A stretch of 39,796 bases of DNA from assembly GCA_002269645.1 (NCBI GenBank), contig NIVC01000066.1, positions 1 through 39,796 on the forward strand, given 5' to 3'. The notes under the pieces are model-generated. The model was not told where the DNA came from. It searched no databases and saw only the letters and a program-made list of their open reading frames with translations. This stretch comes from Macrostomum lignano. Lineage: Eukaryota. This document shows positions 18,064-38,342 of the stretch, piece after piece; the stretch's first letter is position 1; each line of letters begins with the position of its first letter. The position numbers were made by a program, and so were the translations under genes.

Positions 18064-18105
18064 AGGTACTTTCCGAGGGTACAAGAAATGTAAAGGTACA
18101 AGACT

Positions 18106-18210: not shown

Positions 18211-18245
18211 AATGATTTATTATTTAATTTTTTTTCATAGAAAAA

Positions 18246-19046: not shown

Positions 19047-19062
19047 AATTTGCTATTAAAAG

Positions 19063-19800
19063 ATGTCAATAAACTTTGCAGGTGAATCCATTTCTGGCAA
19101 CAGCGCTCTTACATCAGCTCAATATCCATCCTTGACAGGCGATATATCAACAGCGACGAAAAGATCCCAGAGATCAAACTGAATAAAAACAGACTGAAAC
19201 AATTAGAGCGCTCCATGCACCAGCTACAGATAAACATGAAGATCTCAGGCTTAAAGTAGCTAGGCAGAAGTTTGAAAGTGATAAGCTTTATGCCAGTTGT
19301 CACGCAACTAATGAACTTAGGTCAGAAATAACTTCGATAGTCTCGCAAATCAACGGTTTAAGAACAAATTTAGCATCGACAATTAATCTTCTGAGAAACT
19401 CCATTGATAGGCGGATGCGCATTCTTGAAGAAGGAGTTTTCACAAACACAGCTAAAGTGAGAATTTAGAAGAGTTCATGAACCAGTCAACAGCATTGCAT
19501 GATAGAATTAAAGAAAACGTCGCAACCAACACATGTAAAGTGAGGAATTTAGAAGAGTTCATGACTCAGTCAACAGCGTTGCATGATCAAATCAAAGTAA
19601 GAATTACTGCAAATAAAGTCTTTGTAGATTTAGTTTTTACCGAATGGCAGAAATCGGTGAGAAGAATCGGTCGTCTTGAACGCTTGCATAATCTCAAAAA
19701 CATTGACGCTGAAGAGGCACCACAGACCACAAGGGAAACAAGTGATCCAACCGACTTGTTTGAGATCATGCGTAGAATGGAGCTCACAGATAATGAATAG
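19063..19800 (+). pseudogene. Frameshifted coiled-coil ORF, possibly fibre-like
   Basis: MSINFAGES / LDRRYINSDEKIPEIKLNKNRL / APATDKHEDLRLK...RILEEGVFTNTAKVR / NLEEFM(N/T)QSTALHD(R/Q)IK x2 read in successive frames; the ORF track shows only the last 107 aa. Confidence 0.5.
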
Positions 19801-19908
19801 GCAGATTCAGAGACCTGTTGCCGTCACTGCAGACGAAGCAATCAACCGTAAAACAAATCTAACCACCACCAACTAGTTGCCGATTTTTTTTAAAAAATTC
19901 CCTTAAAA

Positions 19909-20565
19909 ATGGATGCTCAAAATTCTCTTTATGATCCGAACGCTCCCACAACACCTAGTGCACCTAGTGCACCCCAATATGAGCAACAAAAACTCTACCC
20001 CGTCATTACTTGTAACTCTCAACAGTTTCGACTAGTGGAGATTCAAAAAATGCGCGATGATCTTGAAAAAAATATTTTCCACAACACAAAGAAAATTAAG
20101 CGCTATGACAACCACTGTAAATTTTTCGACTACAGCAATATGATTCTAGGATCTGTGTCTGTTCTATCTGGATCTGCTGCAGCTGTCTCAGTGTTGCCAG
20201 TCATCACAGCCCCAATCGCAATCCCGCTCGGCTCTGTGGGTGCTGCATGTGGACTTATTTCAGCAATTACTGGAGCATTAGCGCGAAACAGGCGAAAAAA
20301 ACTAAAGCAGCTACAGGAGAAGCAAGTAAAAGAGAAAGGGGTGCACACTTCAATCATAGGGTACATTTCAAGGGCAATCGAGGATAAGTTCATTTCAGAG
20401 GATGAGTTCAAAACCATTCAGGATCTTTATGAACAATCAATTCGAATGAACTTGAACATGGTCGGTACTGATGACATGAGTCAGCTGAGAAATGAACTCG
20501 AGAAAGTTCTTCAACATTATGTGGAAAGAAGGACAACGAGAAGGACAACGAGAAATGCACAATGA
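19909..20565 (+). CDS. Polinton accessory protein with a hydrophobic hairpin
   Basis: 218 aa; LYP...FRLVEIQ, a ~45-residue hydrophobic Gly/Ala-rich stretch, basic RNRRKKLK, and DKFISEDEF. Confidence 0.8.
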   Translation: MDAQNSLYDPNAPTTPSAPSAPQYEQQKLYPVITCNSQQFRLVEIQKMRDDLEKNIFHNTKKIKRYDNHCKFFDYSNMILGSVSVLSGSAAAVSVLPVITAPIAIPLGSVGAACGLISAITGALARNRRKKLKQLQEKQVKEKGVHTSIIGYISRAIEDKFISEDEFKTIQDLYEQSIRMNLNMVGTDDMSQLRNELEKVLQHYVERRTTRRTTRNAQ

Positions 20566-20568
20566 ACC

Positions 20569-20968
20569 CTATGAAACACAGCCAAGAATAATTTCCTTGT
20601 AGGTCTTTCGTGTTTTGGTCATTGCATACAAAACAGTCATGCACAGCTCACCGCAAATATCACTGCTAAGACCTTGGAGAATAAAGTCTGAGCGATAAAT
20701 TTTTTTATTATTTTTCCCTTCATATAATTTCTTAGCTCTTCTGGTACTGCCGTCCCATAGCTATCGAAGTAATAACACTTGTGCTTGCGATCGGGATCAA
20801 TCACCCAGCAAACCCAATGAGATCCTGGCTTATCGGTGGTGTCAAAGTTCATGATGCCGCATTCTTTCTTAGAGGAAAATCAGGCAGAGTGTCCCTCATA
20901 AATATTCCTCTAAAGTTTGGGATTTCCAGTTCGTTAGCCAAATCTTCAAGAAAGTTATTTGTCGTCAT
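20569..20968 (-). pseudogene. Adenain-like cysteine maturation protease, two frameshifts as assembled
   Basis: FRGIFMRDTLP / ECGIMNFD...GSHWVCW...YYFDSYG / IYRSDFILQGLSSDICGELC: catalytic H, D, Q and C all present. Confidence 0.9.
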
Positions 20969-23900: not shown

Positions 23901-24862
23901 GCTTTGGGATCTGAGAGATCGCCAAGCCTCCTTTGTCAAACCTGATTCCCTTCTTTTCGCATTCGATGAGATAGTAGTTGAAATAATTTTGATAATTTGA
24001 GGTTCTTTCGGGGTGGTGAGGTACACTAAAAAGTGCAGAAAGAACTGCCCATAGAGCACAGCAATTGTCTTTATTTTTAACATTTATGCAAGCTTTTTTG
24101 CCGGCTAGCTTATGCGGGAGCTCTATATAAGAGGAGGCTTTAAGTGGGTCATATTTCATGACCATGACAGTCGCTCTTTGAATCCCTCCCACGACCCATC
24201 CGGAACCTCTGGATGTAAACGCTTCAATTTTCTTATTGACATCTTGAAGGAAAGGATCCAGTGTGTCTGTTGGGGTGAATGGCTTTGCCTTTGTTGTCAT
24301 GTAATACTCGAGATGCTCAGTGGGTTTTGCAGGCATATAAAACGCAATCTTGAATGATATCTGTAGTTTAAAGGTCTTGCGTGTTTTGAGTGTGTGATCA
24401 ACAACTGATTGGATGCTGTCTTTATAGTCGTAGATGTTTGCGGTGGTATCCGTTAATTGGGATTGTGTACTCTATGTAATGTTCTGTAAACTTCGTCTGT
24501 GCAAAATTAATCTCTTCAGTGGCAAGCTCCGACTCTTTTAAATGGATTAATTGCTCTAATTTCTCTTGTTCCTGCTTATTTTGTGGGTACTTTGCTTTTT
24601 CACCAGTGAGAGTTTCATATTTGTTAACTAAGTTGCGACTCCTCTCTTGGTGTTCCTTTGCAGAATTTTTTATAGGCGCATACTGGTTTGATTCTAATTG
24701 ATTGATGATTTCCAACTGTTTTTCATAGCTTCCCAGGTGACCAGGGTCGGTGTTGAACTTTTGTTTGCATGCTTCTCTTAGTGAATTACTTTTGTCTTGA
24801 AATGAGACGCCTTTTGAAAAATATTTGTTGACTAAATCTCTTGCTGGATTAGCTTTTGGCAT
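20965..24862 (-). pseudogene. polB: Protein-primed family B DNA polymerase, fragmented by about 7 frameshifts as assembled
   Basis: VVYADFE (ExoI), CHIC...VRDHCH.TGKFRGAAHNTCN, HNAKNYD (ExoII), KGFYPYE, DVFLLADVFE (ExoIII), YLDANNLYGWAM, KLANNSVYGK, YTDTDS, GKMKDE. Confidence 0.96.
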
Positions 24863-24984
24863 TTTTCTCGAAAATATAAAAAAAATTTTGAGGGTGACCA
24901 CCCTGATAGAAAAGTTGAACTGTTTCTACATCCTATAGTAGTATTAGGTTTATGAAGCTGGATAAAGTGGGGTTTTAAACCTCA

Positions 24985-25429
24985 TCACATCCGCATTATT
25001 GTAAACCCAGCATTGTGCAGTGTCATGATGGCTTTGACAATGTCAGACTTGCTTACAGAATTTTCATTCTCACAATCATCACGATCGGGCAGCCCTCTCC
25101 TGCCTTAATTGTTATACCTTTGTCTCTTGCAATCTTTTGCAATTCCAGCTGGTGGGCTCTATCATTCCCAGCTTTAACAGCAGTTGCTACACCTCCAGCT
25201 ACACCACCTGCGGCACTTACAGCGCCTGCAATGATCGGAATAAGAGCTGCTAATGGTAGGATTCCTCCTGACTTTTCATCTGTGATGCTGTGTCTTTGTC
25301 ATTACACTGAACTATTTGCTGCGTGGGATCGATTTTTACTTTGACACCTTTAATTGATATAATACCTGGTTTCTTTGATTCAATGATTTTATTGAGTTTA
25401 TTGATGGTTCTGGTTTCAATCTTTGTCAT
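24985..25429 (-). pseudogene. Adenovirus pX/mu-like core protein precursor, two frameshifts, absent from the ORF track
   Basis: Manual translation: MTKIETRTINKLNK... / ...EKSGG-ILPLAALIPIIAGAVSAAGGVAGGVATAV...KAGEG / ...KAIMTLHNAGFTIMRM*. Confidence 0.75.
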
Positions 25430-25445
25430 TTTTTATTTTAATATT

Positions 25446-26480
25446 TTAATTAATTTCTGTGTCAGCTGGTATCACTAGGAGTTCAGCTCTAGTGAATGAC
25501 CGCGTGGGGGATTTAGGGTTAAAGGCTTGAGATAAAAAGTAATAGTCACCGGAGTCGGAGGTAAAATGTCTGTCTATTTTATGCACATCAAGGCTGAAGT
25601 ATGGATCTGTAGCTCTTCTTTTGGTGTCTTCTCTAGCTCTCCAGGTAGATATAAAAAGCGTAGAAACTCAGAGTTTGTCAGTATGTATGGTGATTCAACT
25701 CCTGGAAGCTTAGGGTAGTTCGAGGTGTGTTTTGTGTTGTGTGTGTTGTGTGGGGTTGTCGTGTTGTTGTCTGTTCTATGAGATGCCTTAAGTTCGACAG
25801 TGTCTTGTTTAATTGCATGGGATGGTTTCAATCCAGTCATGCGTGTGACTTCATTGTTCAGTTGCTCTATAACAGTGGGGAGTCTTTCTGTCCACTTGGT
25901 ATAGTACTGCCCCGCACTCAGTTTGAGTTCTTGCGCTGTCTGCTTAGTGAATAGTCTCTTGGCTAGAGTTAGATTGAATCTTTCCACAAAAGCCTGGTCT
26001 CTGTGCAAGTTTGTTCTGCCATAGCGAATCTCTGTGTTTTTCTTTTCCATAAGGGATTTCACTACACCCATGAATTCCTTACCCGGGTCGGTCATAAAGA
26101 TTTGGGGGTATGTGAGCGGAGAGTTTTTATAAATATCTTGCAGTGCGCTGGCAACAACCTCTGACTTCTTCGTCTTGAGTGGGCGAGCTTCCTTATATCT
26201 GGAAGCAATGTCAATAATTGTAAGAGCATACTTGTAGCCTGAGTCGTTGGGGAGAAACAAAAGATCTGCTTGGTGCGCTTCATTAGGTTTATAAATACTG
26301 AAATGGGGCCTTTCAAATTTTACTGGTGGGAAATAGACTTGAAAGACAGCCTGCTTAGAGAGCCATTTTTCTACTGTAGCTTTTGGCTCTTACTCAGCTC
26401 CATGAGTTTACTAACGCATTTTTGCCTACAAAGAATCCTTTGTCGCTGTAGTAGAGTTTTTTAAGTTTCTGATCTGTCAT
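25446..26480 (-). pseudogene. int: Retroviral-like (rve) DDE integrase, three frameshifts as assembled
   Basis: KKLYYSDKGF N-terminus; HQADLLFLP (D), FMTDPGKEF (D), AFVERFNLTL (E); C-terminal GELE...RRATDPYFS...RSFTRAELLVIP. Confidence 0.93.
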
Positions 26481-26510
26481 TTATTTAAAAAGAAAATTTT
26501 AAATAAAATA

Positions 26511-27011
26511 ATGCAGCGCTCTGGTGGTAAAATAGATTCACATGGACTGATAGAAAAGCTTCCTCATCCAAACAAAGGCTGGACACTTCCCGGCTATAAA
26601 TATTGCGGGCCTTTGAATCCTCTTGAAATACAGCTGGATGGAAACAACAACCCAAATCCTGGGCATGAGCCTGTGAATGAGCTAGACTCTGTCTGCATGT
26701 GGCATGACGTTAAATATAGAGATTTTCCTGAGGAGAAGAATCGTTGGGACAAAGAAATGCTTAAGAGACTAGACAATATAGGGGCTTCAAGCGGATTTCG
26801 TGAGTCGATCGCTCGGAAGCTAGTTAAAGCTGTTATTTTTAGTAAGACAAAACTGGGGTTGGGGGTGTACGCCGAGGGCGGGTGTTTGGGGAGAGAGGGC
26901 GAGTGCACGGGGAGAGAGGGCGAACGCACGGGAGCAGAGTTTATTTTGTGCGCTCCTAACAATGAATTGGGAAGACTGCTGAAAGAGCTGGGGGTAGAAA
27001 GGGGCGCTTGA
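26511..27011 (+). CDS. Parvovirus VP1u-type phospholipase A2
   Basis: GWTLPGYKYCGPLN (Ca-binding loop) and PVNELDSVCMWHDVKY (HD catalytic motif), followed by DKEML. Confidence 0.9.
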   Translation: MQRSGGKIDSHGLIEKLPHPNKGWTLPGYKYCGPLNPLEIQLDGNNNPNPGHEPVNELDSVCMWHDVKYRDFPEEKNRWDKEMLKRLDNIGASSGFRESIARKLVKAVIFSKTKLGLGVYAEGGCLGREGECTGREGERTGAEFILCAPNNELGRLLKELGVERGA

Positions 27012-27853
27012 ATCGGGAAGGGCATGAGCAAGTGTGGATTTGAGTAAGTACAGTTTTTTATTCCCTAAAGAGTTGCGCACAAGAGAGATTCTCATTCTCC
27101 AGAGAGCTAAGAGCAGAAAATAAAAAGTCAACCGCTTCGCCGCCATTAGCATGCATGGACTGTGTATGTTGAGATTCCCTCCTTGATTGATATTGATTAT
27201 TGGCCAAATTGCGAGGCCAGTTGGCCCGCCGAGTTGGCCTCGGCCCGCCGATTTGGCCTCGGAATGTGGCCCGCCTAGTTGGTCTCTACGGTATGAAGAT
27301 ATGGGGCGGGGTAGAGAGAGGCGCTTGAGTCGGGAAGGGTAAACTATTATTCTCAGCCCTAACCAAGCGCAACAGCTGCATTTTGAAAAGTAGAAGCAGA
27401 AGGGGGGTGGGGTAACTGCTATTTGCTGAGGGAGCGCAGCCCTCTAATCGATTTTGCGAATGTACAAGTTCCACGCGTGCTTTCCTTTCCGCTTTGACAA
27501 ACCCAATCAACCAAGGAAATGTATGGGGACTTCAAGCGGGTGGAGGGAATCAATCGCTCGGAAGCTAGTTAAAGCACCCTCACATTCACACGCCTCATGT
27601 TCTATCGTTCACTGAGCTATATCGATTATTTTTTCCCTGCTTGACTCCAAGATTGTACAGTCTAAGAATTTTCTGGAATTTTCTAGCTGTATAGCTGTAT
27701 TTAAGCAAATGCAGAAACACTCGGGTTGATTCTCCCCGCATATGCCATCAACTGCGACTGAGAAACGACGACTGCAGGAACTTAAGCACGCTGAAAGCGA
27801 TCTAAGAAATTGTCCGCCAAACTAGAAGATTAGAAGACAAGAAGATTTAGAAA

Positions 27854-28531
27854 ATGGAAGTCGAGTGGAATCTTCATTTGACAGATAAGCAAGGCCTTTG
27901 TGCCATGCTACAAAGAGTTTTACAGGATATTCCGTCACATCTACAAGCAAGAAGAAGAGAGGAACTAACCACCTTTTTCGGTCTAGAAACTGGCGACCTA
28001 CCAATCGAGTTTTTCGCCATGGCCCCTGATGATATCGCCGCAGCGAATGAAGCGCAAAATGTGAGTAGCGAAGAGAAGAAGGCGGCGGCTCTGCAGAAGA
28101 AGATGGCGGATCTGCAGATATTCAGGGAGAAGTTGTACGCATCCCGCGTAACACTAGCTGATCAGCTGATGGACGCTGTTGATCACCAGCTTCCATCTGG
28201 CGAGCAGAACATCATCACTAGGGTGAAGGCGGCTCTAGCAAAATACAAGAAGACTCAAATTGGAGGTCTACATTGGATTCTCGAAGTTGGGCGGCTGCTA
28301 AAAACTTATCGCACCGAGAACTTTGGACAAGATGTTAAAGTGCGGTTCGCCCATTTGTGTAAAAATGTAAACATCCAGGAATCAACTGGCTATTTGTACA
28401 TTCGTCTGTACAAACTGTCTGTTACCTACCCAGGCTTGAGACAGGTGTCAATGCCAATTAGGGAACTAAACTCTAAGATGAAGTTTCTAGAAGAAATTTT
28501 GGCCAGTGATCCTGCGTGGAAAGTTGTGTAA
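27854..28531 (+). CDS. Helical accessory protein, possibly DNA-binding
   Basis: 225-aa open frame; ILEVGRLLK...F...NIQESTGYLYIRLYK resembles the DUF3102-like helical pattern (by eye only). Confidence 0.6.
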   Translation: MEVEWNLHLTDKQGLCAMLQRVLQDIPSHLQARRREELTTFFGLETGDLPIEFFAMAPDDIAAANEAQNVSSEEKKAAALQKKMADLQIFREKLYASRVTLADQLMDAVDHQLPSGEQNIITRVKAALAKYKKTQIGGLHWILEVGRLLKTYRTENFGQDVKVRFAHLCKNVNIQESTGYLYIRLYKLSVTYPGLRQVSMPIRELNSKMKFLEEILASDPAWKVV

Positions 28532-28558
28532 TTTTTAAATTCAGTTCATTTAGAATTT

Positions 28559-28998
28559 TTCTAACGCGTTAGAATTTCAAAGAGAAGATTCAACAACTGG
28601 AGACAGCCGATTGGTTAAGTAGAGGAGGGTAGCAATTTTCTCAGTACTGTGTGCAACTCAGTCGGTGGGTTTTAAATTCTAACGCTGTTAGAAATTTCTA
28701 TGTGAAAAGTTTCCCGCAAGATAAGCTTGGGCACACCAAATTTTCACATAGAAAATTCTAACGCGTTAGAGAATCTAGCTGCTGGCTCAAAGGAACGCTA
28801 GGCTGGCTCTGTATGGTTAAAAGAGGGGGGTAGAAATTTTCTAACGCCGTTAGAATTCTCTATGTGAAAAGCTTCCCGCATGATAAGCTTGGGCACACCA
28901 AATTTTCACATAGAGAATTCTAACGGCGTTAGAGAATCTAGCTGCTGGCTCAAAGGAACGCTAGGCTGGCTCTGTATGTTGTTGAAGAATTCTAACGC
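28559..28998. repeat. Array of TTCTAACG(N)CGTTAGA palindromes within a 162-bp tandem duplication
   Basis: Palindromes at 28559, 28677, 28756, 28839, 28918, half-site at 28990; period 162 bp; internal CTATGTGAAAA...TTTTCACATAG stem. Confidence 0.9.
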
Positions 28999-29120
28999 AG
29001 ATCCTACATAGTGTCTGTTTTTTCTACCATTTTTGATACTCTTGTAATAGTTAATACATATCCTATCAGCTGTGCAACCGTTAATAAATATATAATTCTT
29101 ACTAATGAATAATAAAATTA

Positions 29121-29587
29121 TTTTTTTTTTCAATGGGTAAGGACCCTGGGTCAGGGGATTTAAAGTTTTAGGGATGTGGTAGCACGTTGCGGATTGAATG
29201 TGGGGAGAAGAATGCAGATTATTTTCTGATTGTTTCGAAGATGCTATGGATGGATGTCAGTGGATTATGTCTGTGTCAGTGAGCATAACAGGTGTCCTAC
29301 TGTTATGCTCTGATTCTGTCAGGGATAATGCTCTGATTCTGTCAGGGATAATATGGATGGATTTAATTGGATTATGGAGGATGTTTTGTGAGCGAGTGCG
29401 ACCCCCCTTTTTTTCTTATTCTGTCGGGGATAATATGGATGGATTTAGGTGGATTATGGAGGACGTTTTCGGAGCGAGTGCGACCCCCCTTTTTTTCTGA
29501 TTCTGTCAGGGATAATATGGATGGATTTAATGGGATTATGGAGGAGGTGAAAAATTTTGTCCCAGAAGCCCCCTCATGCCTTCTACT
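29121..29587 (-). repeat. Right terminal inverted repeat with 82-bp subrepeats (2 plus a partial)
   Basis: Reverse complement of the left TIR; GGATTATGG heads at 29369, 29451, 29533. Confidence 0.92.
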
Positions 29588-30358
29588 ATGGTACGACCTC
29601 AGCTCACTCCTTTTATTTTTTTTAACCTTTTATGCCTATGGCCATTGTTGCTTACTTTCCCAATATTACTGATTAATTTTATATTATTAACGTGTTGTTG
29701 CTAAGACCCTCTGTCTAGCTTAAACTTTCTATTCTTCAGCATTAATTGGAGTGTCTCTAATAAACGTTGTTCAAAGTTTGCCGTGCGCAAAATTCGTATT
29801 AAGCGCTGAATAGAAACTCAAGTATTGCACAAATAAGAATACAGTATTATAATTGGTATGCGGTCAAAGCCTTTCCTACTACTCAATAACTCGTACTTAG
29901 CCAAATGTTCAACCTACTCCAATGCACTACCCTTAATCGAAGCCCACAAGCTACGTACACTCCCTCTCGCTACAAGACAAGGCTCTTAAAAAAGCTCCGA
30001 AGCAGCGCACTGGAAAAAATCACCAAGACAATTCTTGGCTCAACTTGCCAAAAGAAACAAAAGACACAAGTTTTCAATTTAAGACTGTATAGTGGGTGCT
30101 TGTCTACCAATTTTCTACCGTTATCAACCACACCTATATATTATGCGTCTTTTTCCTAATACGTTTTGCTTGCATTGCTTACATTTTTTACTAATTAAAT
30201 TTATTTTGCGGTTTACTCGCTTTACTTTAGCTATAGAAGAAATATACAAGAAACTAAAAAAACAGCTTACGTACAACAGTTGTTTTTCAAAGCCTCTATT
30301 AAATTACATAAAAAGCCCAAAGTTTAAAGTATCAATTCAAACCTCAGCCTTTCTTCAC

Positions 30359-30556
30359 TTAATTGTCCATCGTCAAATCAAAGTATTCCTCCGACTTTAT
30401 TTGAGCACTTCCTTCCTCGTGGATATTCAAGCGATAGCCGTTACTCCCGTTACTCGTTGAGATCAGAACAATCTCCACGCCTACTTGTCCTCCTTCAACC
30501 CTTCCGATCGTGCTTTCGTAGCCCGGTGGGGGTCTGTTAAATACCCCGTTTTTTGG
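30359..30556 (-). CDS. Coding exon of an unknown small-protein family (copy A)
   Basis: PPGYESTIG...VEIVLISTS...GYRLNI...EEYFDLTMDN*; paralog at 37641-37838 differs at many synonymous sites; preceded by an 81-nt GT-AG intron (30557-30637). Confidence 0.65.
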   Translation of the reverse strand, partial: PKNGVFNRPPPGYESTIGRVEGGQVGVEIVLISTSNGSNGYRLNIHEEGSAQIKSEEYFDLTMDN

Positions 30557-30867
30557 CTGCAAGAAGTAGAAATGCAGGGCATTACTGCAAGATCATTTAA
30601 AGATTTTTGTTAAACACAAAGTCAAATAATTGCTTACCTTCTTTGACATACCGCTCGGCTAAGGCCTTTTTATGCCGACTTTTCCATACATTCGCCCGTA
30701 GTATTCGCTCGAAGTATTGTAATTGATAAAATATTCTTTTGGAACGCGGCTAAGTTGGATTTGTTAGACTCCATCTCCTCTCCTTTTTATATAGAGTTGG
30801 CCCAACAGAGTGGGCCATCACGACCTGCAAGTCTAGCGATATCGAACCGGGCGTGCGGTTTTTTGTT

Positions 30868-31062
30868 TCAGAAGAGATGAGCGATCACCCCATCTTCTTT
30901 AGTCCTTGCTACAACTGACTTATTCTTCTTAACCCCACTAACTTTTGTATATACAACAGCTGACAGTTCTTTGAAGACAGCCGTGAAGTCGGCAGATTTA
31001 GCAATCTCGCTTTGCAGATCGTCCACAACCAAAAGATCTCCCGATCGTAAGCTCCCCAACAA
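30868..31062 (-). CDS. Unknown ORF, paralog of 38091-38342, probably frameshifted near its end
   Basis: SAVVYTKVSGVKKNKSVVARTKEDG versus SAVVYIKVSGVKTKKTVVARDKDDG. Confidence 0.5.
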   Translation of the reverse strand: MLGSLRSGDLLVVDDLQSEIAKSADFTAVFKELSAVVYTKVSGVKKNKSVVARTKEDGVIAHLF

Positions 31063-31098
31063 TGCGCCTGTAAAACCCCGAATAAAATGCGAGCGTAT

Positions 31099-31202
31099 AT
31101 GATGTGTTCCTTACTACCAAGACTTTCTTAGTAATCAAGGAACAATCACTTCTAGCTACTGCTAGGCAACCCAGTAATCAAACGAAGGTATTTATTACCT
31201 TG
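31099..31202 (-). ncRNA. Three-hairpin motif, copy e
   Basis: AAGGTA-N5-TACCTT, invariant ACTGGGTTGCCTAGC, CTAGC-N4-GCTAG, 52-nt hairpin with 23 pairs. RNA function and strand are inferred. Confidence 0.45.
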
Positions 31203-31215
31203 AGTCCTGACTAGT

Positions 31216-31320
31216 GTGATGTGTTCCTTATTACCCGACTTTCGATAATCAAGGAAAAATCACTTCTAGCTCAGTAGCTAGGCAACCCAGTAAGTCAACA
31301 GAAGGTATTCAATTACCTTG
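31216..31320 (-). ncRNA. Three-hairpin motif, copy d
   Basis: Same architecture with different loop sequences. Confidence 0.45.
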
Positions 31321-31463
31321 AGTCCTTTGGAGATCTCTCGGAGTAGCTCTCGATTAGTTTCAGTTGATCTCGTACAGTCACTTCTGACTATCGTTTGTAG
31401 ATCGGGTCCGATTCTTCTTTCTTCTTCAAATAGTTCCGGCCGGATTCTGTCGCTCGGACCAAT

Positions 31464-31566
31464 TGATGTGTCCCTTATTACCCGACTTATGGTAATCAAA
31501 GAACACTCACTTCTAGCTCAATAGCTAGGCAACCCAGTAAGTCAATTAAAGGTACTTCTTACCTTG
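31464..31566 (-). ncRNA. Three-hairpin motif, copy c
   Basis: Same architecture; G-U-preserving changes in the long stem. Confidence 0.45.
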
Positions 31567-32114
31567 ACGTCGCTTGGAGATATCTCTTCTGTAGTCTTCG
31601 AGTAGATCTCGCTTGTCTCTATGTGATCTCGTAGATCAGGCGCCTTGATTCTTCAGTTGCTCTGGTCCTGGTTCCTCTTGTACAGTACTTCCGATAAGTT
31701 CCTCCGGCCGGTATCTTCAGTCAGGACCAATCAGAGGCCTCGTATCAACAATGGGTACCCTGCGCCGAACAGCGGTTTGAATTAAGCCTCCTTCTTCTAG
31801 CAGTGCCTTTATGCACTCTAGGTATAGCTCCGGAAACCACTGATAGTCCTCTAAGATCTATCAGGGGCAGTCCTTCTGGAGACTGCAACCAATGGAGTCT
31901 AAACAGACTCAAGAGTCTCAACAGACTCAAATAGACTCAAGTCTCAATAGACTTGAGCGAGACGTCTCTAACACAACGGGCGCAAATAAGGAAGGCTTAC
32001 CGCAACAACTCGACCGAGTCTCGATTGCCTTGGTGATCAGGAAGTCCTAAGGCTTCCTCTTCGGAGCTTCTCCTCTCGTCGGGAGTTGGCTCCTGGTCCG
32101 CTTCGGACCGCTTG

Positions 32115-32122
32115 TATTTATA
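32115..32122 (-). promoter_or_regulatory. TATA box of unit B1
   Basis: TGCCTATAAATACAAG on the minus strand in all three units, followed by a GGTCC-N5-GGACC hairpin and a CG/GTAAGC donor 110-120 nt downstream. Confidence 0.55.
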
Positions 32123-32841
32123 GGCAACTTTTTGATCCAAAATAGCATCATTACAAACCACGTGTTGCGCTAAAAGGGGAAAATGGCTCATGGCGTATCA
32201 TTTTGGTAACATCTTTTCCTGGTAGCGTGATTCATTCAAAGCTTAGGCGCACATGCGTGTACTTACTTACTTGTAGTAGCATTATACGATTATCTTCTTT
32301 TAACCTTTTTTTAACGGGAGGTAGAACACTCTACAAGTGCTCTTCCTGTGAGTTGATCTCGCAATAGGATTCAGTTAGATCAGTTGATCTGGCGCCTTAC
32401 TTCTTGTCTCTGTTCCGAGTCTTCTTTGTGCTCCTTGACTTCTTGCCGGCCGGTGTGGTATCTGTAGTTCGGACCAATAGGAAGCTTCGAATTAACAATG
32501 GGATCCCTGTGCCTTACTTTGGTTTCTAGAAAGCCTTTTCCTTCTAGAGCGCTGCTATGCACTCTAGGTATGGCTCCGGTAAGCTCTGATAGTCTTCTAA
32601 GATCTATCAGGGTTAGTCCTTCTGGAGACTACGACCAATGGATTCTTAATGGATTCAAGAGTCTTAACAGACTCTAACTCAACAACAATACGAGTCGACT
32701 CTAAAAACGGGTGCAAATGAGAAAGGCTTACCGCAAGAACTCGAACGAGTCTAGGTAGGAAGTCTCCTGATGGCTTCCTCTTCGGAGCTGCTCCTTCTGG
32801 AGTCTAAAATCTGAAGCTCCGGGTCCGCTCTGGACCACTTG

Positions 32842-32849
32842 TATTTATA
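32842..32849 (-). promoter_or_regulatory. TATA box of unit B2
   Basis: As for B1; donor at 32726-32731. Confidence 0.55.
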
Positions 32850-33290
32850 GGCAATCGGACCCCACATGAGGTTCATTGTCTTAAATGTCAAAGGTTCACG
32901 GATTGGTTGCTGTCAAACATGGCATGGTAGAAAGTTACTTCATTGGTTTAGTGTAAGCGCGCATGATAGGGTACAGCAGCTCAGTTATTTTTAGATATTT
33001 GATCACTTCTAGGTTGATCAAATTATTTGTATGGGTTAGTGCATATCTTTATACATGCTACTTGTCTTACTACTATATAAGTAGTACGTTAACAATTTTA
33101 TGGATTTTTGAGAGAGGCTGAATACTCTACAAAATCTCCCATGTTACAAAAAACTCGTCCCGAGTTTGAATAATAATATAAATTTACAGAAACCTCTTGA
33201 ACTTGATATGGTATATATTTATATTGTCGGTATGTTACATTGTATACATTAGTAGTGGATAGTTCTGTCACAGTTAATGGAAAGTTATCA

Positions 33291-33593
33291 TCAGATAAAT
33301 GCAGATGACACTTGCCCCTGTGTTGATGCCGCTCGGACGATCAGCCGAAACCGATTCTGAGTACGGCTGTTGTCTGGCGCGCAGCATGCCACCGCCCAGA
33401 ATGTCGGCTGAAAGCGTGTGAAGCGCGGTTCCTCTGTGCGCTCGAGTATCATCAGGTAGGCGTCAATACTCGTGAGCCCAGGGTGCTCGCGAGCCAGGCT
33501 CCTGGCAATGCCAAGGACGTGACGCCACGACTCCTGATGCCGGTGCGGCCACGGCCACGACCGGACGGCGATGGACAACTGCTCGAAGGTCAA
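33291..33593 (-). pseudogene. N-terminally truncated paralog of the C-terminal domain of the RING protein
   Basis: TFEQLSIAVRSWPWPHRHQESWRHVLGIARSLAREH...IDAYLMILERTEEPRF aligns with 35118-35380; no ATG; joined directly to motif copy b. Confidence 0.65.
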
Positions 33594-33596
33594 GCT

Positions 33597-33698
33597 TAAT
33601 GTGTTTCTTATTACCAGATTTTCTTTGTAATCAAGGAACCACCACTTCTAGCTCGATGCTAGGCAACCCAGTTATCAGTAATGGTACTGTTTACCTTG
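33597..33698 (-). ncRNA. Three-hairpin motif, copy b
   Basis: Same architecture; most divergent copy. Confidence 0.4.
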
Positions 33699-33861
33699 AC
33701 TTCAGTTGAGATATCCCTTAGTTGTTCTCTGGTAGGTCTCGTGTCGATCTCTACGTGAGTAGTTCTCAATCTTCTTCTTCGTACACGTCGATTGATGACC
33801 AGGTCCGAATCTCTGGTAGTCCTTCGGGTGAAGTAGTTGAAGTAGTTGGTCGTTCGGACCA

Positions 33862-33966
33862 ATGATGTGTTCCTTATTACTAGACTTTATCTGTAATCAA
33901 AGAACACTTACTTCTAGCTCTTTAGCTAGGCAACCCAGTAATCAAATGAAGGTATCTGTTACCTTA
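33862..33966 (-). ncRNA. Three-hairpin motif, copy a
   Basis: Same architecture. Confidence 0.45.
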
Positions 33967-34487
33967 ACTCCGGAGTAGTTTCCTCAATACTTCTTGGGTC
34001 GACCTCGAGCGTAGATCTCGATGTAGATCTCGTCAACTTCTAGACGTCTAGGGTTAGTAGACCAGGTCCGAGTTCCTTTCACTTCTGGTTAAGTAGTTCC
34101 GGCCGGTATCTGTAGTTCGGACCAATAAGAAGCTTCGTATTAACAATGGGTACCCTGCGCCAAAACTGCGGTTTAAGTCAAGCCTACTCCTTCTAGCAGT
34201 GCCTCTATGCACTCTAGGTGTAGCTCCGGTAATCACTGATAGTCTACCAAGATCTATCAGGGTAGTCCTTCTGGAGACTGCTGCCAATGGAGTCTCAATA
34301 GACTCAAGAGTCTCAACAGACTCTAACCCAACACAAGTGAGACGTCTCAATCAACGGGCGCAAATGAGAAAGGCTTACCGCAAGAACTCGAGCGAGTTTA
34401 GCTAGGAAGTCCTCTAGTGGCTTCCTCCTCGGAGCTGCTCCTTCTGGAGTCCAAAATCTGAGGCTCCGGTCCGCTCTGGACCACTTG

Positions 34488-34495
34488 TATTTATA
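34488..34495 (-). promoter_or_regulatory. TATA box of unit B3
   Basis: As for B1; donor at 34373-34378. Confidence 0.55.
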
Positions 34496-35117
34496 GGCAA
34501 ACGGACCCCACATGAGGTCACGTGAGTTCGACTTCTCAACTGTCAAAGGGTCACGGTTTGCTTGCTGTCAAACATGGCAGGTTAGAAAGTTACTCCATTG
34601 GTTTAGTGTAAAAACGCATGATTGGTTACCGCATTTGAGTTATTTTTAGTTAAATTTGATTGATTGGTTCACTTGAGTGCATGCTGAATGATGCATTTCA
34701 CCTGCGGTTTAAGCTGACAAGCGCGGGTCACACGAGATTGGGTGATTTCTAAAATTCGCATGCTCGAGATTTCTCTCTTTCTATTGGTTGATTCAAATAT
34801 ATATATGGTTCAGCGCATCTCCTTATTCATGCTCCTCATTTTACTACTATATAAGTAGTACGTTAACAATTTTAAAAAGCTTTTCTGGGGGGTATAATAC
34901 TCTACAACATCTCCCTTTTTTACGAAAAAACTCGTCCCGAGTTTTAATAATGACAGAAAATGCATGAGTAAAGTTTCTATATAGGGAGTATATTTAGCAC
35001 TGTCAATTTTACACTGAATATGTCAGTAAGGGTTAGTACTAGTCTAAAGTTATTAACAGTGAAATGGAGCTGGCCTTTTTCTCCGCCGTCTGTCCGATGT
35101 TTGTGCTACCGAGACGT

Positions 35118-35753
35118 TCAGCCGAATCCAAGCCTGAGCACGGTGGAGACCTGCTGCGCAGACCGCGCAGCCAGGCATGCCACGGCCCAGGTCAACGACT
35201 GAAACCTGACGAAGCGAGGGTCTTCTGTCCGCTCCAGCAGATACAGGTAGGCGTCGACGGCGGTGAGCTCCGAGTGCTCACGCGCCAGGTCCCGTGCGAT
35301 GTTGAGCACGGTACGCCACGACGCCTGGTGCTAGGGCGGCCAGGGCCACGACCGAACGGCAATCGCCAACTGTTCTAACGTCATGAGGTCGGGATTGGTG
35401 AGCGACAGCTCAGGCACTGCTGACATAGAAGCCAGCAAAAGGACTGTCGAGTGTGTCACCGCCTCCATACACACGGTGCACGTTTGAATGTCGCGTGCAC
35501 CGTACTTTCGAAGACAGTCAGCACAGACCCAGTGCCGGTTCGCACAAACCCGGAACTGGGGCTGTTCGCCGCACAGGGCACAGGTGACCCTCGCTCTGCG
35601 ACACGTTGGACACGTCGTTACCATCGTGACTGTGCCTTCTAGTTGCCGGGCTGCTGTGTCGCAGGGGAGACACACTTGGTGTCCCCACTCGCAGGTCGGG
35701 AGCATGAAATCCCGCATCTCGAGGCAGCATGGACATGGTGTGTTCTTGGCCAT
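35118..35753 (-). CDS. Tandem C3HC4 RING-finger protein with a C-terminal domain beyond an in-frame TAG
   Basis: C-x2-C-x10-C-x3-H-x2-C-x2-C-x16-C-x2-C and C-x2-C-x8-C-x3-H-x2-C-x2-C-x11-C-x2-C; TAG at 35331-35333 is in frame with 35118-35330; ATG directly preceded by TTTCACCCGCAG. Confidence 0.8.
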
Positions 35754-36179: not shown

Positions 36180-37640
36180 ACTACGCTCGTACGACTTTTC
36201 CTATCACCCCGCCCCAGCACAAATGTACATTATTCAACAGTCTGCCTCTCGCCTGCGCCAGCGTACACCCGCTGTTATTCTTCGTCCCCTGTTATCGATC
36301 TCATAAGAAAGACCTCTTTCGCTCTCTTTAAAATCGCTTAAATCACTGTGTTAAGAAGTTTAGGAGTGTAGCCGTGTAGGACAGGAGTATTTCGCTAAAA
36401 TCGCATTTAAAGCAAGACAATGATTCAACAACAGATTATCATTGCATTAAGGAACCAGGCTAACCAGATGCGCGCACTCACTCGAGCTATTGTGGCACTC
36501 CAGTCAAAATTCAATGGCTCTACACAGCCGCTGAGTCGCACTTCAAAGCACCAGTTGCAGTCCGCACCATTCAGTGGCACTGAAAAACCAGTCGGACTGC
36601 TAACAGCAACAAAGTTGTTGTTGTGTTCATCTATTCGCTAGTATCGTGGGTTGTTCGCTGCTACAAGTTTTGGTAGGTTTAAATTGCCTATGTGAATATT
36701 TCAACTCATGTTCTCCAGTTTTGTTTCATTGTTTCATCCTTTTTAACATCAGCGCATCGCGCGCGGCTCGATCAAGAACGCCACCGCAGTCGCCTTCAAT
36801 CTCAGCAAGTGGACAACCAACCCAAGAGACAGGTCTGCACTATCCCCGGATCGACCCCTCAACGCGAATGGCACGCGATTCCCCTGCAGAGTATCAATGA
36901 GGGATGAGAGTCGCCAAACCAAACTGGAGAGTCAATAGAATTAGATAGCGTTCCATCGCAGCGGATGCAAGGCCTCACTGCCCAGGCTCTGGTGTGATAG
37001 GAACCACAATTTATTGAACTACAAGACAAGACGAGGGTAAGATAAGACAGGATGAGATACATGTACGACAGGGTGATAAAAAGAACGTATAGACGACCGA
37101 AATAATCATTTTAGGTTCAGTTCCTAAAATCATGTAAAAATGAATTGTTGGCATCATACTACTAAATTGCATAAGTAGAGTAGTTTGCGAAAATACAGTG
37201 TAAGCAATAGTTACTAGATTGGCATTTCCAATGGAACGGTACTAACAACAACACGGTGCAAATTTTTTTACATTTTTTTAATATTTTTGTATCTGCGATC
37301 AGCAGACCCGCCTATCTTCTGTAACTCTTCATACTGCTTAAATTTATTTTAAATTGTAGCTTAATGCTTAAATGTAATTTCCGTGTGCTTGATGCTATGT
37401 CATTTGCCCATTCTTCATTTTTAACACTTTATCGCCATCGATGCTAACTTTCCCATTATTATTTGGGAAATTTAAATTTAAATTTTAGAATTTTAAATTT
37501 ATTTGCGGTTTACTCGTTTTACTATAGATAAAAAATACACAAGAAACTATAAAACAGCGTACGTACATCAGTTGTTTTTCAAAGATTATATGCTATTAAA
37601 TTACATCAAAGTTCAATGTTCCGATCAAACCTCAGTTCAG

Positions 37641-37838
37641 TTAATTGTCTGTCGTTAGATCAAAATACTCCTCTGTCTTTATCCCAGCACTTCTTCCATC
37701 GTCGATGTTTAACCGATAGCCGTCCCTCCCGGTACTCGTCGACACCAGAACGATCTCCACGCGTACATTTCCTCTTTCATATATTCCGACCGTACCTTCG
37801 TAGCCAGGTGGGGTCTGTTAAATACCCCGTTTTTTTGG
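37641..37838 (-). CDS. Coding exon of the unknown small-protein family (copy A')
   Basis: PPGYEGTVG...VEIVLVSTS...GYRLNI...EEYFDLTTDN*; 87-nt GT-AG intron at 37839-37925; the first codons are disrupted as assembled. Confidence 0.6.
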
Positions 37839-38090
37839 CTGGAAGAGGTAGAAATGTAAAACATTACTGTAAGATCGTTTAAAGATATTTGTTAAACATA
37901 AAGTCGAATATATAACTGTGCTCACCTTCTTTGACGTACCGCTCAGCTAAGGCTTTTTGTTGAGCCGTCTTGTCCATAGCTTTGCTGGATAAAAATAATC
38001 TTTTTATCTTTATATTCAAAAATTCTTTTGGAACGCGGCTAATTTGGATTTGTTAGACTGCATCCCCTCTCCTTTTATATAGAGTTGCTG

Positions 38091-38342
38091 TTATCGAACG
38101 GAGCGTGCGGTTGTTTGATTCTGAAGGAATGAGCGATCAGCCCCATCATCTTTATCCCTTGCTACAACTGTCTTCTTCGTCTTAACCCCACTAACTTTTA
38201 TATATACAACAGCTGACACAGTTCCCCTAGTGGCATTTTCAGCCTTGGCACCAACTGTTTCAGTCTTGACTGCATTTATCATCCCCCTTTCCATTAGTAG
38301 ACCATTCCTATTTAAAGGATTTCTAAGAAGACCAACTGTCAT
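38091..38342 (-). CDS. Unknown ORF, paralog of 30868-31062
   Basis: Shared SAVVYxKVSGVK...VVARxKxDG block. Confidence 0.5.
   Translation of the reverse strand: MTVGLLRNPLNRNGLLMERGMINAVKTETVGAKAENATRGTVSAVVYIKVSGVKTKKTVVARDKDDGADRSFLQNQTTARSVR

What the first reader, a model, noticed from the sequence alone, without database searches (positions are those of the whole stretch)
31099..33966. Five copies of an unrecognised ~104-nt three-hairpin motif: candidate structured-RNA or miRNA cluster
On the minus strand each copy reads AAGGTA-N5-TACCTT (loops all differ), an invariant 15-mer ACTGGGTTGCCTAGC, CTAGC(T)-loop-(A)GCTAG (loops differ), then a ~52-nt hairpin. In copy e that hairpin has 23 pairs, two single-base bulges and ~21-nt arms; its apical pairs covary between copies (AAGA/TCTT, CGA/TCG, AGAT/GTCT, AGA/TCT) around an AAG/AAA loop. 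Conserved stems with variable loops point to selection on RNA structure. The geometry fits pre-miRNAs, but the two extra hairpins and the 15-mer are unexplained, so a new ribozyme or processing element is possible. I recognise no known family.
Basis: partly seen in the sequence, partly recalled or inferred. Interest (0 to 1): 0.82.

Follow-up and report, generated by a model that had tools for sequence, protein, structure and literature searches.

The report
Repeated hairpin module in AUG-free leader
Five copies of a conserved ~104-nt three-hairpin element are real, but they are the conserved cores of a repeated module inside a long, start-codon-free leader RNA behind a duplicated TATA promoter in a eukaryotic genome, and they do not look like ordinary microRNA genes.

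Summary
Five minus-strand copies share an invariant 15-mer, and a covariance model finds these five and nothing else in the window. The claimed covariation is not supported: no aligned stem pair has a change on both sides.

New context changes the reading. The copies lie 1.5 kb outside a Maverick/Polinton. Each is the conserved core of a ~250-nt tandem module. The modules sit downstream of a TATA/CCAAT promoter unit that segmental duplication has triplicated. From about 20 nt upstream of each TATA box, the minus strand has no ATG for 1255, 1061 and 585 nt (about 32 expected), while the plus strand is normal. That marks a transcribed, ribosome-scanned leader.

The long hairpin has 14 G:U pairs on the minus strand and 1 on the plus strand. 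The motif and a ~200-nt leader core are 75-93% conserved where the spacers are only 30-60% identical.

Most likely this is a cis-acting structured RNA module in a Pol II leader. It has a 5'-splice-site sequence held in a hairpin, a single-stranded docking 15-mer, and a 17-23-bp helix.

It fails the canonical pri-miRNA criteria: the stem is far below ~35 bp and the loops are tiny. A tailed-mirtron-like small-RNA origin is not excluded. No match was found in Rfam, viral, metagenome or prokaryote-genome collections, or in full-text papers. Interest is moderate.

The parts
31099..31205 (-). Motif copy a (last copy of unit P1). Hairpin 1 AAGGTA-ataaa-TACCTT at 31201-31185, 15-mer at 31175-31161, hairpin 2, and hairpin 3 (23 bp, -23.4 kcal/mol).
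31215..31321 (-). Motif copy b. 15-mer at 31291-31277. Hairpin 3 has 17 bp.
31462..31568 (-). Motif copy c. 15-mer at 31538-31524. Hairpin 3 has 18 bp and begins with GTGAGT.
33597..33703 (-). Motif copy d, the most degenerate copy. 15-mer at 33672-33658. Hairpin 3 is only -8.8 kcal/mol. The copy abuts the truncated G' fragment.
33863..33969 (-). Motif copy e. 15-mer at 33939-33925. Hairpin 3 has 18 bp and begins with GTAAGT.
31322..31461 (-). Spacer of module b. With spacers 31569-31735, 33704-33862, 33970-34130 and ~32300-32482 it forms the variable part of the ~250-nt tandem module. The spacers are unstructured and hold conserved islands ATTGGTCCGA, CCGGCCGG, TCGGACC and CGAGATCTAC. The stem GGTCCGA/TCGGACC becomes GGTCCTG/CAGGACC in P1.
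30894..32147 (-). ATG-free zone of unit P1 (1255 nt). It starts 26 nt upstream of TATAAATA (32122-32115) and spans the leader, copies c, b and a, and the 3' splice site ttttacag|g (AG at 31069-31068).
32283..32866 (-). ATG-free zone of unit P2 (585 nt). TATAAATA lies at 32849-32842. This unit has a leader and one spacer but no motif copy.
33453..34512 (-). ATG-free zone of unit P3 (1061 nt). TATAAATA lies at 34495-34488, CCAAT boxes at 34601-34787, and CACGTG at 34524. The zone contains the leader and copies e and d.
31727..31925 (-). Conserved leader core, 85-90% identical between P1 and P3 (homologues at ~34122-34320 and ~32470-32675). It is a chain of short hairpins: GAGTCT/AGACTC twice, GCAGTC/GACTGC, CTGATAG/CTATCAG and AGTGC/GCACT.
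31996..32003 (-). GCG|GTAAGCC, a 5'-splice-site-like sequence conserved in all three leaders within a 75-85% conserved block.
33291..33593 (-). G', a 5'-truncated copy of the 3' half of gene G. It is joined directly to the end of copy d and marks a breakpoint of the segmental duplication.
35118..35753 (-). G, a GC-rich double-RING orphan ORF with an in-frame TAG at 35333-35331. It lies upstream of P3 and has no homologue.

Best explanation
The five copies are the conserved cores of a ~250-nt tandem module (variable spacer plus 104-nt motif). The modules lie in the long 5' leader of an RNA polymerase II transcript made from the minus strand. The transcript starts at a TATA/CCAAT/E-box promoter unit that segmental duplication has triplicated (P3, P2, P1).

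Shown by the sequence:
- The promoter grammar.
- The complete, strand-specific lack of AUG over 1.0-1.25 kb from each promoter. This means the whole leader, spacers included, has been selected as RNA that scanning ribosomes traverse.
- Conservation of the motif and a leader core where the spacers between them have diverged nearly to saturation.
- Minus-strand-specific G:U pairing in hairpin 3.
- Variable spacing between the arms of hairpins 1 and 2.

Inferred: the motif acts in cis on this RNA.
- Hairpin 1 holds a consensus 5' splice-site sequence (AAG|GUAA) in a 6-bp stem.
- The invariant single-stranded UGA-UUACUGGGUUGC between hairpins 1 and 2 is a sequence-specific docking site for a protein or snRNP.
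- Hairpin 3 is a stable 17-23-bp helix.

My preferred mechanism is that the modules set how the leader is processed and read. This would work through regulated use or masking of the repeated donors towards the acceptor 31 nt after the last copy, and/or through multimerised binding of a factor that gates scanning. The logic is that of repeated protein-docking RNA modules. They are not Drosha-type miRNA genes.
For: Leader and promoter:
- ATG on the minus strand is 0 against 31.7 expected across the three zones. Every other trinucleotide lies at 0.57-1.97 of expectation, and the plus strand has 11, 12 and 7 ATG.
- Each zone begins 18-26 nt upstream of TATAAATA. CCAAT boxes and CACGTG lie upstream.

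Conservation:
- In the P1cb versus P3ed alignment the motif is 75-93% identical, the leader core 85-90%, and the spacers 30-60%.
- The five copies are star-like at 78-87% identity, with 69 invariant positions.

RNA structure:
- Hairpin 3 has 14 G:U pairs on the minus strand against 1 on the plus strand.
- All five copies fold better on the minus strand.
- Arm spacing varies (5-6 nt for hairpin 1, 4-6 nt for hairpin 2) while the stems stay invariant.
- Short hairpins are enriched through the whole leader: 15, 9 and 5 against about 2, 2 and 1 expected.
- The spacer stem GGTCCGA/TCGGACC has two adjacent compensatory changes in P1.

Splice signals and coding:
- AAGGTAA is invariant in 5 of 5 copies.
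- A pyrimidine-rich CAG acceptor follows copy a.
- The motif has stop codons in all three minus-strand frames and no consistent plus-strand frame, so it is non-coding.
Against: - There is no expression data, and no homologous locus from any other genome. Everything rests on five paralogues at one locus.
- Formal covariation is absent in the aligned stems, so constraint on sequence rather than structure cannot be excluded for most positions.
- No convincing coding sequence follows any of the three leaders in the window. P3 runs into a truncated G' fragment, P2 into promoter-upstream sequence, and P1 into a 2-codon ORF. The RNA may therefore be non-coding, or the units may be decaying.
- Positions +5 and +6 of the AAG|GTAA sites vary (T, T, G, A, C at +5). 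The constraint may be on the stem rather than on splice-donor function.
- Global folding z-scores of the leader are unremarkable outside the motif and parts of the core.
Confidence: 0.5

Rival explanations
1. Splicing-derived small-RNA precursors (tailed-mirtron-like). An intron beginning at AAG|GTAA, or at the GT that opens hairpin 3 (GAA|GTGAGT or GTAAGT), is spliced out and debranched. Its tails are trimmed back to the stable 52-nt hairpin 3, and Dicer cuts that hairpin into a ~22-nt duplex.
For: - Hairpin 3 is 52-55 nt with 17-23 bp, G:U wobbles and single-base bulges, which suits a Dicer substrate.
- Its first paired bases are the GU of GUGAGU (copy c) or GUAAGU (copy e).
- Its 3' arm is the more conserved arm: 5 mismatches in total against 10 for the 5' arm.
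- Copy a is followed after 31 nt by ttttacag|g, a 3'-tailed-mirtron layout.
- Tailed mirtrons are an established class (PMC4556696, PMC4513878).
Against: - Only copy a has a convincing acceptor downstream.
- No copy ends in AG at the 3' end of the hairpin.
- The second donor is weak in copies a, b and d (GTGATT, GTGGTG).
- This model does not explain the invariant 15-mer and hairpins 1-2, which would be a discarded tail.
- It does not explain the absence of AUG in the spacers.
- No complementary target lies in the window.
- There is no small-RNA data.
Confidence: 0.15
2. A canonical polycistronic pri-miRNA cluster processed by Drosha/DGCR8 and then Dicer.
For: - Hairpins are repeated on one strand of a Pol II transcript.
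- The arms are more conserved than the loops.
- The MFE z-scores of the whole copies are -1.9 to -4.5.
Against: - The stem is 17-23 bp, with no extension into the flanks, against a ~35-bp requirement.
- Apical loops are 3-8 nt and lack UGUG (PMC6298569).
- No Rfam miRNA family matches the copies.
Confidence: 0.04
3. A double-stranded-DNA element: an array of palindromic transcription-factor or origin-binding sites, like the hr enhancers of large insect DNA viruses. In this reading the 15-mer is a further binding site and no RNA role exists.
For: - Hairpins 1 and 2 are perfect palindromes with free centres.
- TCAAGGTAA resembles a nuclear-receptor extended half-site, and GTTGCC resembles an RFX half-site. 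Both resemblances are recalled from my own knowledge and were not tested.
- Loop-less palindromes such as GAGGCCTC/GAAGCTTC stay palindromic between units.
- Palindromic 8-mers are mildly enriched, z about 2.
Against: - Mismatches in hairpin 3 are strand-asymmetric, 14 G:U against 1. A duplex binding site does not predict this.
- Half-site spacing varies by 1-2 bp.
- The element lies inside a strand-specific AUG-free zone downstream of a TATA box.
Confidence: 0.08
4. A functionless relic: a tandem repeat or small mobile-element fragment carried along by segmental duplication. Its apparent conservation would come from gene conversion or from recent common origin.
For: - The neighbourhood is a graveyard of duplicates: G has an in-frame stop, G' is truncated, and A' is frameshifted.
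- Copy a is a local 116-nt duplication.
- No statistical covariation was found.
Against: - The copies are equally distant from one another (78-87%). Neighbours are not homogenised and positional counterparts (c/e, b/d) are not closer, so recent conversion is not evident.
- The 69 invariant positions contrast with spacers at 30-60% identity inside the same duplication.
- AUG avoidance has been kept independently in diverged spacers.
- The motif has no terminal inverted repeats or target-site duplications.
Confidence: 0.12
5. A new self-cleaving ribozyme or self-processing RNA.
For: The only evidence is the invariant unpaired stretch between helices, with conserved flanking nucleotides.
Against: - No hit to any ribozyme family even at E<=10.
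- All loops are variable, so no loop-mediated tertiary contact is conserved.
- No complementary partner for the 15-mer exists in the window.
Confidence: 0.03

Closest known systems
Repeat-module regulatory RNAs (Xist A-repeat, NORAD repeat units, hsr-omega 280-nt repeats). Comparison from my own knowledge.
   Same: Each is a Pol II RNA that carries several tandem units. Each unit has a short, strongly conserved core, with small hairpins and/or a single-stranded motif, and variable spacers separate the cores. The logic is multimerised docking of a factor.
   Different: There is no sequence similarity. Here the core begins with a consensus 5' splice-site sequence. There are only 2-3 units per transcript. 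The host RNA is completely AUG-free, which is not a described feature of those RNAs.
Tailed mirtrons (PMC4556696, PMC4513878)
   Same: A ~50-nt hairpin whose 5' end coincides with a GU, lying near splice signals. For copy a, a tail leads to a good 3' splice site. The helix length suits Dicer and not Drosha.
   Different: The hairpin ends do not coincide with a 3' splice site or a clear branch point in four of the five copies. The conserved 50-nt region upstream has no counterpart in mirtrons. No small-RNA evidence exists.
Canonical animal pri-miRNA clusters
   Same: Tandem hairpins on one strand of a Pol II transcript, with arms more conserved than loops.
   Different: The stem is 17-23 bp rather than ~35 bp. 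The loops are 3-8 nt. No UGUG motif is present. No family match was found.
Retroviral or retrotransposon 5' leaders (own knowledge)
   Same: A long AUG-free leader behind a TATA promoter, a splice donor held in a stem-loop, several short hairpins and palindromes, and sometimes tandem repeats.
   Different: There is no conserved primer-binding site: the candidate TGG... segments differ between units. No gag or pol lies nearby. The repeated units are tandem segmental duplicates that include part of a neighbouring gene, and they are not LTRs.
Spliced-leader RNA genes (own knowledge)
   Same: About 100 nt, three stem-loops, with the splice donor inside stem 1.
   Different: No conserved leader exon lies upstream of the GU. 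No Sm site is conserved between the hairpins. The copies have no promoter of their own: a and b are 9 nt apart.

Membership tests
Canonical pri-miRNA (Microprocessor substrate) | ~35-bp stem (lower plus upper stem) flanked by single-stranded RNA | tested here: not met
   Hairpin 3 has 17-23 pairs and no extension into the flanks. The requirement is taken from PMC6298569.
Canonical pri-miRNA (Microprocessor substrate) | Sizeable apical loop with a UGU/UGUG motif; basal UG; downstream CNNC | tested here: not met
   Loops are 3-8 nt (AAG, GAAAG, CAUAAGUCG...) with no UGUG. CNNC-like CGAC occurs after copies c and e, but it is too common to count.
Canonical pri-miRNA (Microprocessor substrate) | Discrete ~22-nt 5p/3p reads with 2-nt 3' overhangs | not testable with these tools
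   No small-RNA data are available for the unknown source organism.
Any curated RNA family (Rfam 15, including miRNA, snoRNA, ribozymes, SL RNA) | Covariance-model match | tested here: not met
   There were 0 hits at gathering score over the whole window. No hit overlaps the copies at E<=10. ARAGORN finds no tRNA-like gene.
Mirtron (conventional or tailed) | The 5' end of the hairpin is a functional 5' splice site | tested here: inconclusive
   Hairpin 3 starts with GUGAGU (c), GUAAGU (e), GUGAUU (a, b) and GUGGUG (d). The exon side is GAA rather than AG. No junction data exist.
Mirtron (conventional or tailed) | The 3' end of the hairpin is the 3' splice site (conventional or 5'-tailed), or a tail leads to one (3'-tailed) | tested here: inconclusive
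   No copy ends in AG at the base of the hairpin except d (AUUAAG) and b (CACUAG). Only copy a has a pyrimidine-rich CAG acceptor 31 nt downstream.
Spliced-leader RNA | Conserved leader exon 5' of the GU, an Sm-binding site, and one promoter per gene | tested here: not met
   The sequence upstream of GU varies (GGACUCAAG, CGACGUCAAG, UGAAGUCAAG, CGGAGUUAAG). The segment between hairpins 1 and 2 is not a conserved RAUUUUGR. Copies a and b are 9 nt apart.
5' untranslated leader of a scanned Pol II transcript | Strand-specific depletion of AUG starting at a core promoter | tested here: met
   There are 0 ATG against 31.7 expected in 2.9 kb. The zones start 18-26 nt upstream of TATAAATA, and the plus strand is normal.
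5' untranslated leader of a scanned Pol II transcript | A coding sequence starting at the first downstream AUG | tested here: not met
   The first AUGs are at 30893 (ATGGGGTGA), 33452 (a 54-codon remnant of G') and 32282. None opens a convincing gene. The coding sequence may lie outside the window or may be lost.
Duplex-DNA palindromic enhancer/origin repeats (hr-like) | Symmetric palindromes with fixed half-site spacing and no strand preference | tested here: not met
   G:U pairs number 14 on the minus strand and 1 on the plus strand. Spacing varies: 5-6 nt and 4-6 nt.
Repeat-module protein-docking RNA (Xist A-repeat / NORAD type) | Tandem units with a conserved core and variable spacers in one transcript | tested here: met
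   The core is 75-93% identical and the spacers 30-60%. Unit spacing is 247 and 267 nt.
Repeat-module protein-docking RNA (Xist A-repeat / NORAD type) | A factor that binds the repeated core | not testable with these tools
   This needs pull-down or CLIP in the source organism.

The most novel reading that the evidence does not exclude
The 104-nt unit is a new kind of non-canonical small-RNA precursor. A conserved 5' platform (5' splice site held in a hairpin, invariant 15-mer, second hairpin) directs splicing- or nuclease-dependent release of a 52-nt Dicer-ready hairpin. The host is an AUG-free RNA, and the route bypasses Drosha differently from known mirtrons.
Probability: 0.12. Interest if true: 0.75.

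Novelty: new variant of a known kind. Interest (0 to 1): 0.45.

Why it matters
If the modules are functional, this is a compact natural example of repeated structured RNA units placed in a leader that has been purged of every AUG over more than 1 kb. Each unit combines a splice-donor hairpin, a sequence-specific single-stranded platform and a long helix. That would make it a tractable system for asking how repeated RNA modules control leader splicing, scanning or small-RNA release.

The AUG-desert criterion used here is also a cheap, annotation-free way to infer the transcribed strand and the extent of a leader from raw sequence. As it stands the case rests on one locus in an unidentified eukaryote, so its importance is potential and not demonstrated.

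Tried and rejected
1. Known RNA families. Rfam at gathering score over the whole window, and at E<=10 over 30500-35500, gave nothing on the copies. There are no tRNA or tmRNA genes.

2. Homologues elsewhere.
- The 15-mer alone in viral contigs gave 17 single, chance-level hits.
- The 15-mer plus hairpin 2 in metagenome contigs gave one hit. It lies in a bacterial contig, lacks the rest of the motif, and scores E 0.024 over 26 nt only.
- An 18-mer from the 3' arm and a leader hairpin pattern, both in viral contigs, gave chance hits or nothing.
- The prokaryote genome collection gave nothing.
- Plasmids gave nothing.
- Full-text papers gave nothing.

3. Protein routes to related loci or to the organism.
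- The double-RING protein G has no homologue.
- A leader ORF used as a proxy for DNA homology has none in 1.84e9 proteins.
- A LINE reverse-transcriptase fragment has none.
- Polinton capsid relatives (<=76% identity) come from unnamed Logan and ENA contigs and did not reveal the host.
- Exact-protein look-ups failed.

4. Coding. The motif has stops in all three minus-strand frames, and indels break the plus-strand frames. No consistent donor/acceptor phase joins the spacer ORFs. A short run of synonymous-looking differences between spacers b and d did not extend.

5. Part of the Polinton. Rejected, because the terminal inverted repeats end at 29587.

6. LTR retroelement leader. Rejected for lack of a conserved primer-binding site, gag or pol. 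The repeats include part of gene G.

7. Spliced-leader RNA, snoRNA boxes, Pol III A/B boxes with terminators, and a U12-type branch site were compared by eye with consensus sequences I know. None was conserved in all five copies.

8. Targets of putative small RNAs. No complementary site for either arm exists in the window.

9. Globally structured leader. Sliding-window z-scores are unremarkable outside the motif and the core. A two-sequence RNAalifold run does not favour one strand.
Full report
**Observation**

The region contains five minus-strand copies of a ~104-nt element:
- a: 31099-31205
- b: 31215-31321
- c: 31462-31568
- d: 33597-33703
- e: 33863-33969

The 15-mer ACTGGGTTGCCTAGC occurs five times without a mismatch, where 0.09 occurrences are expected. 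A covariance model built from the five copies recovers them at E 3e-25 to 3e-21. With filters off it finds nothing else in the 39.8-kb window; the next hit is E 0.14.

Each copy has four parts:
- Hairpin 1, AAGGTA-loop-TACCTT.
- A single-stranded stretch ending in the 15-mer.
- Hairpin 2, CTAGC(T)-loop-(A)GCTAG.
- A long hairpin 3 with 23, 17, 18, 19 and 18 pairs in a-e.

The stems of hairpins 1 and 2 are almost invariant and their loops are hypervariable. The claimed covariation does not survive a formal count. None of the 32 aligned pairs has a change on both sides, and the covariation score equals the shuffled mean. Only the apical CGA/TCG of copy b is a possible double change.

**Where it lies**

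The window is eukaryotic. It holds:
- Fragments of a LINE-like reverse transcriptase and RNase H.
- A 16-kb Maverick/Polinton bounded by inverted repeats at 13320-13877 and 29157-29587. It carries a double-jelly-roll capsid gene, an A32-type ATPase, a protein-primed polymerase, an rve integrase and a parvovirus-type PLA2 domain.

The finding lies 1.5 kb outside that element.

A self-comparison shows that the copies belong to a triplicated unit read on the minus strand. The order is:
- Gene G, 35753->35118. It is an orphan double-RING ORF with an in-frame TAG at 35333-35331.
- An upstream region with five CCAAT boxes and a CACGTG.
- TATAAATA of unit P3 (34495).
- A ~420-nt leader, then module e and module d.
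- A 5'-truncated copy of G (G', 33593->33291).
- The same upstream region, then TATAAATA of P2 (32849) with a leader and one spacer.
- TATAAATA of P1 (32122) with a leader and modules c, b and a.
- A pyrimidine-rich acceptor ttttacag|g, with AG at 31069-31068.

The motif is therefore not a free-standing gene. It is the conserved part of a ~250-nt tandem module with start-to-start spacing of 247 and 267 nt. The spacers of these modules share only short islands: ATTGGTCCGA, CCGGCCGG, TCGGACC and CGAGATCTAC.

**The decisive new feature: no AUG**

On the minus strand there is no ATG from 32148 to 30893 (1255 nt), from 34513 to 33452 (1061 nt), or from 32867 to 32282 (585 nt). Each zone begins 18-26 nt upstream of a TATA box.

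Over these 2.9 kb a first-order expectation is 31.7 ATG. Every other trinucleotide lies between 0.57 and 1.97 of expectation. The plus strand has 11, 12 and 7 ATG. The only comparable ATG-free runs in the window are a minisatellite and a second promoter-proximal zone at 1885->1172.

The spacers of P1 and P3 are nearly saturated with substitutions (30-60% identity), so AUG avoidance has been maintained independently in them.

I read this as the signature of a transcribed minus-strand leader that scanning ribosomes traverse. It fixes the strand, the approximate start and the extent of the RNA that carries all five copies.

**Evidence for function and for RNA**

Conservation:
- Within the single duplication that produced P1-c-b and P3-e-d, identity is 75-93% over the motif and 85-90% over a ~200-nt leader core, but 30-60% over the spacers.
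- The five copies are equidistant at 78-87% identity. Neighbours are not homogenised and positional counterparts are not closer to each other. 69 positions are invariant.
- This pattern looks like purifying selection. It does not look like recent gene conversion.

Pairing:
- Hairpin 3 has 14 G:U pairs in 95 on the minus strand and 1 in 86 on the plus strand. Summed energies are -82 and -57 kcal/mol.
- Counted as events, about ten transitions gave G:U and two gave A:C.
- The spacing between the arms of hairpins 1 and 2 varies (5-6 and 4-6 nt). A hairpin tolerates this, but a dimeric duplex-DNA site would not.

Wider leader:
- Short perfect hairpins are enriched through the whole leader: 15, 9 and 5 against about 2, 2 and 1 expected.
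- A spacer stem shows two adjacent compensatory changes, GGTCCGA/TCGGACC to GGTCCTG/CAGGACC.

Caveats:
- Covariation in the leader hairpins is not statistically significant.
- Sliding-window folding z-scores are unremarkable outside the motif and the core.
- A two-sequence consensus fold does not prefer one strand.

The motif is non-coding. Stops occur in all three minus-strand frames, and indels break the plus-strand frames.

**What it is not**

- Not a known RNA family. No Rfam family matches, even at E<=10.
- Not a canonical pri-miRNA. The helix is 17-23 bp with 3-8-nt loops and does not extend into the flanks. Microprocessor substrates need a ~35-bp stem with basal UG, apical UGUG and CNNC determinants (PMC6298569).
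- Not a spliced-leader RNA. It lacks a conserved leader exon, an Sm site and a promoter per copy.
- No snoRNA boxes, Pol III boxes with terminators, or ribozyme cores are conserved.
- No target site for either arm is present in the window.

**Most likely mechanism**

I favour a cis-acting RNA module in a Pol II leader, with confidence about 0.5. The main features the module combines:
- An invariant AAG|GUAA sequestered in a 6-bp stem.
- An invariant single-stranded UGA-UUACUGGGUUGC presented between two hairpins.
- A stable helix.

Shown by the sequence:
- The promoter grammar.
- The AUG-free leader.
- The conservation pattern.
- The strand-specific pairing.

Inferred: the repeated donors are masked or used in a regulated way towards the acceptor after the last copy, and/or the 15-mer multimerises binding of a factor that gates processing or scanning. 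The logic resembles repeat-module RNAs such as the Xist A-repeat or the NORAD units; that comparison comes from my own knowledge.

Weak points:
- Positions +5 and +6 of the donors vary.
- No convincing coding sequence follows any leader in the window.
- The neighbourhood is full of decaying duplicates.

Rivals and my confidence in each:
- A tailed-mirtron-like small-RNA origin, 0.15. For it: hairpin 3 starts with GUGAGU or GUAAGU in c and e; copy a has a 31-nt tail to a good acceptor; the 3' arm is the better conserved. It does not explain the conserved 5' half or the AUG-free spacers.
- A functionless relic, 0.12.
- Duplex-DNA binding sites, 0.08.
- A canonical miRNA cluster, 0.04.
- A ribozyme, 0.03.

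**Searches for relatives**

Every route failed:
- DNA patterns in viral, metagenome and prokaryote-genome collections gave only chance hits.
- Plasmids and full-text papers gave nothing.
- Protein proxies from the locus had no homologues.
- Relatives of the Polinton capsid come from unnamed contigs.

The source organism could not be identified, so neither comparative nor expression evidence was available.

**Verdict**

This is a real, non-random, conserved element that does not match any Rfam family. Its context in an AUG-free, promoter-proximal, triplicated leader is the more informative discovery. I score interest as moderate (0.45) and rate it a new variant of a known kind (repeated structured modules in a regulatory RNA or leader). 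I leave a 12% chance that it is a new non-canonical small-RNA precursor.

Noticed in passing
window 13320-29587: A Maverick/Polinton of about 16.3 kb. Its terminal inverted repeats contain 82-nt sub-repeats. It carries a DJR capsid gene (15105-16400), an A32 ATPase (18246-19046), a pPolB split over several ORFs (21189-23777), an rve integrase (25574-26260) and a parvovirus-type PLA2 domain ORF (26511-27011). The closest capsid relatives are 70-76% identical and come from unnamed contigs.
   Followed up: partly
window 1172-1885 (minus strand): A second ATG-free zone of 713 nt. It lies behind CACGTG, two AGCCAATCAG boxes and TATTTAAA, and contains a GTGAGA...TTGCAG intron-like segment. The promoter-plus-AUG-free-leader grammar is the same as in the P units, without sequence homology.
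   Followed up: partly
window 35118-35753 (minus strand) and 33291-33593: G is a GC-rich (~60%) ORF with two C3HC4-like RING motifs and an in-frame TAG at 35333-35331. Its coding exon starts directly after an acceptor (cccgcag|ATG). It has no homologue among 5.8e9 proteins. G' is a 5'-truncated paralogue, 68-73% identical.
   Followed up: partly
window 30195-30965 and 37493-38218: Two direct copies (A and A'), ~770 nt long and 76% identical, flank the whole G/P cluster. Each has a TATATAAAAAGG box and an ~80-nt intron-like segment. The reading frames differ by frameshifts, so at least one copy is a pseudogene.
   Followed up: partly
window 31196-31191 (minus strand): The only AATAAA in the three leader units sits in the loop of hairpin 1 of the last copy (a). 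It overlaps the AAG|GTAA sequence and lies upstream of the GU-rich 15-mer. This could be a U1-controlled poly(A) site, or it could be chance.
   Followed up: no
window 9015-10250 and 12305-13041: Two GC-rich minisatellites with periods of 28 nt and 34 nt, lying to the left of the Polinton.
   Followed up: no
window 5102-5257: A near-perfect palindrome with 70-nt arms that are 94% complementary and a 16-nt centre. It sits at the border between a GC-rich LINE-like region and an AT-rich region.
   Followed up: no
window 18106-18231: Five tandem copies of a 21-nt unit (AGTCCCRAAATGACACATCYA) inside the Polinton, just upstream of the ATPase gene.
   Followed up: no
window 13040-13319 (minus strand): An acidic ORF immediately outside the left end of the Polinton, behind an acceptor-like tcttctcaaacag|G. 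It reads ...DYYPTDQFRFAAPDAYAQLGMHHLANTAPGGSFEFDEQNAFDDLNDEDYFDGEPMKVDRIQARFDRLHELAE*. It may be a host exon next to the insertion site.
   Followed up: no
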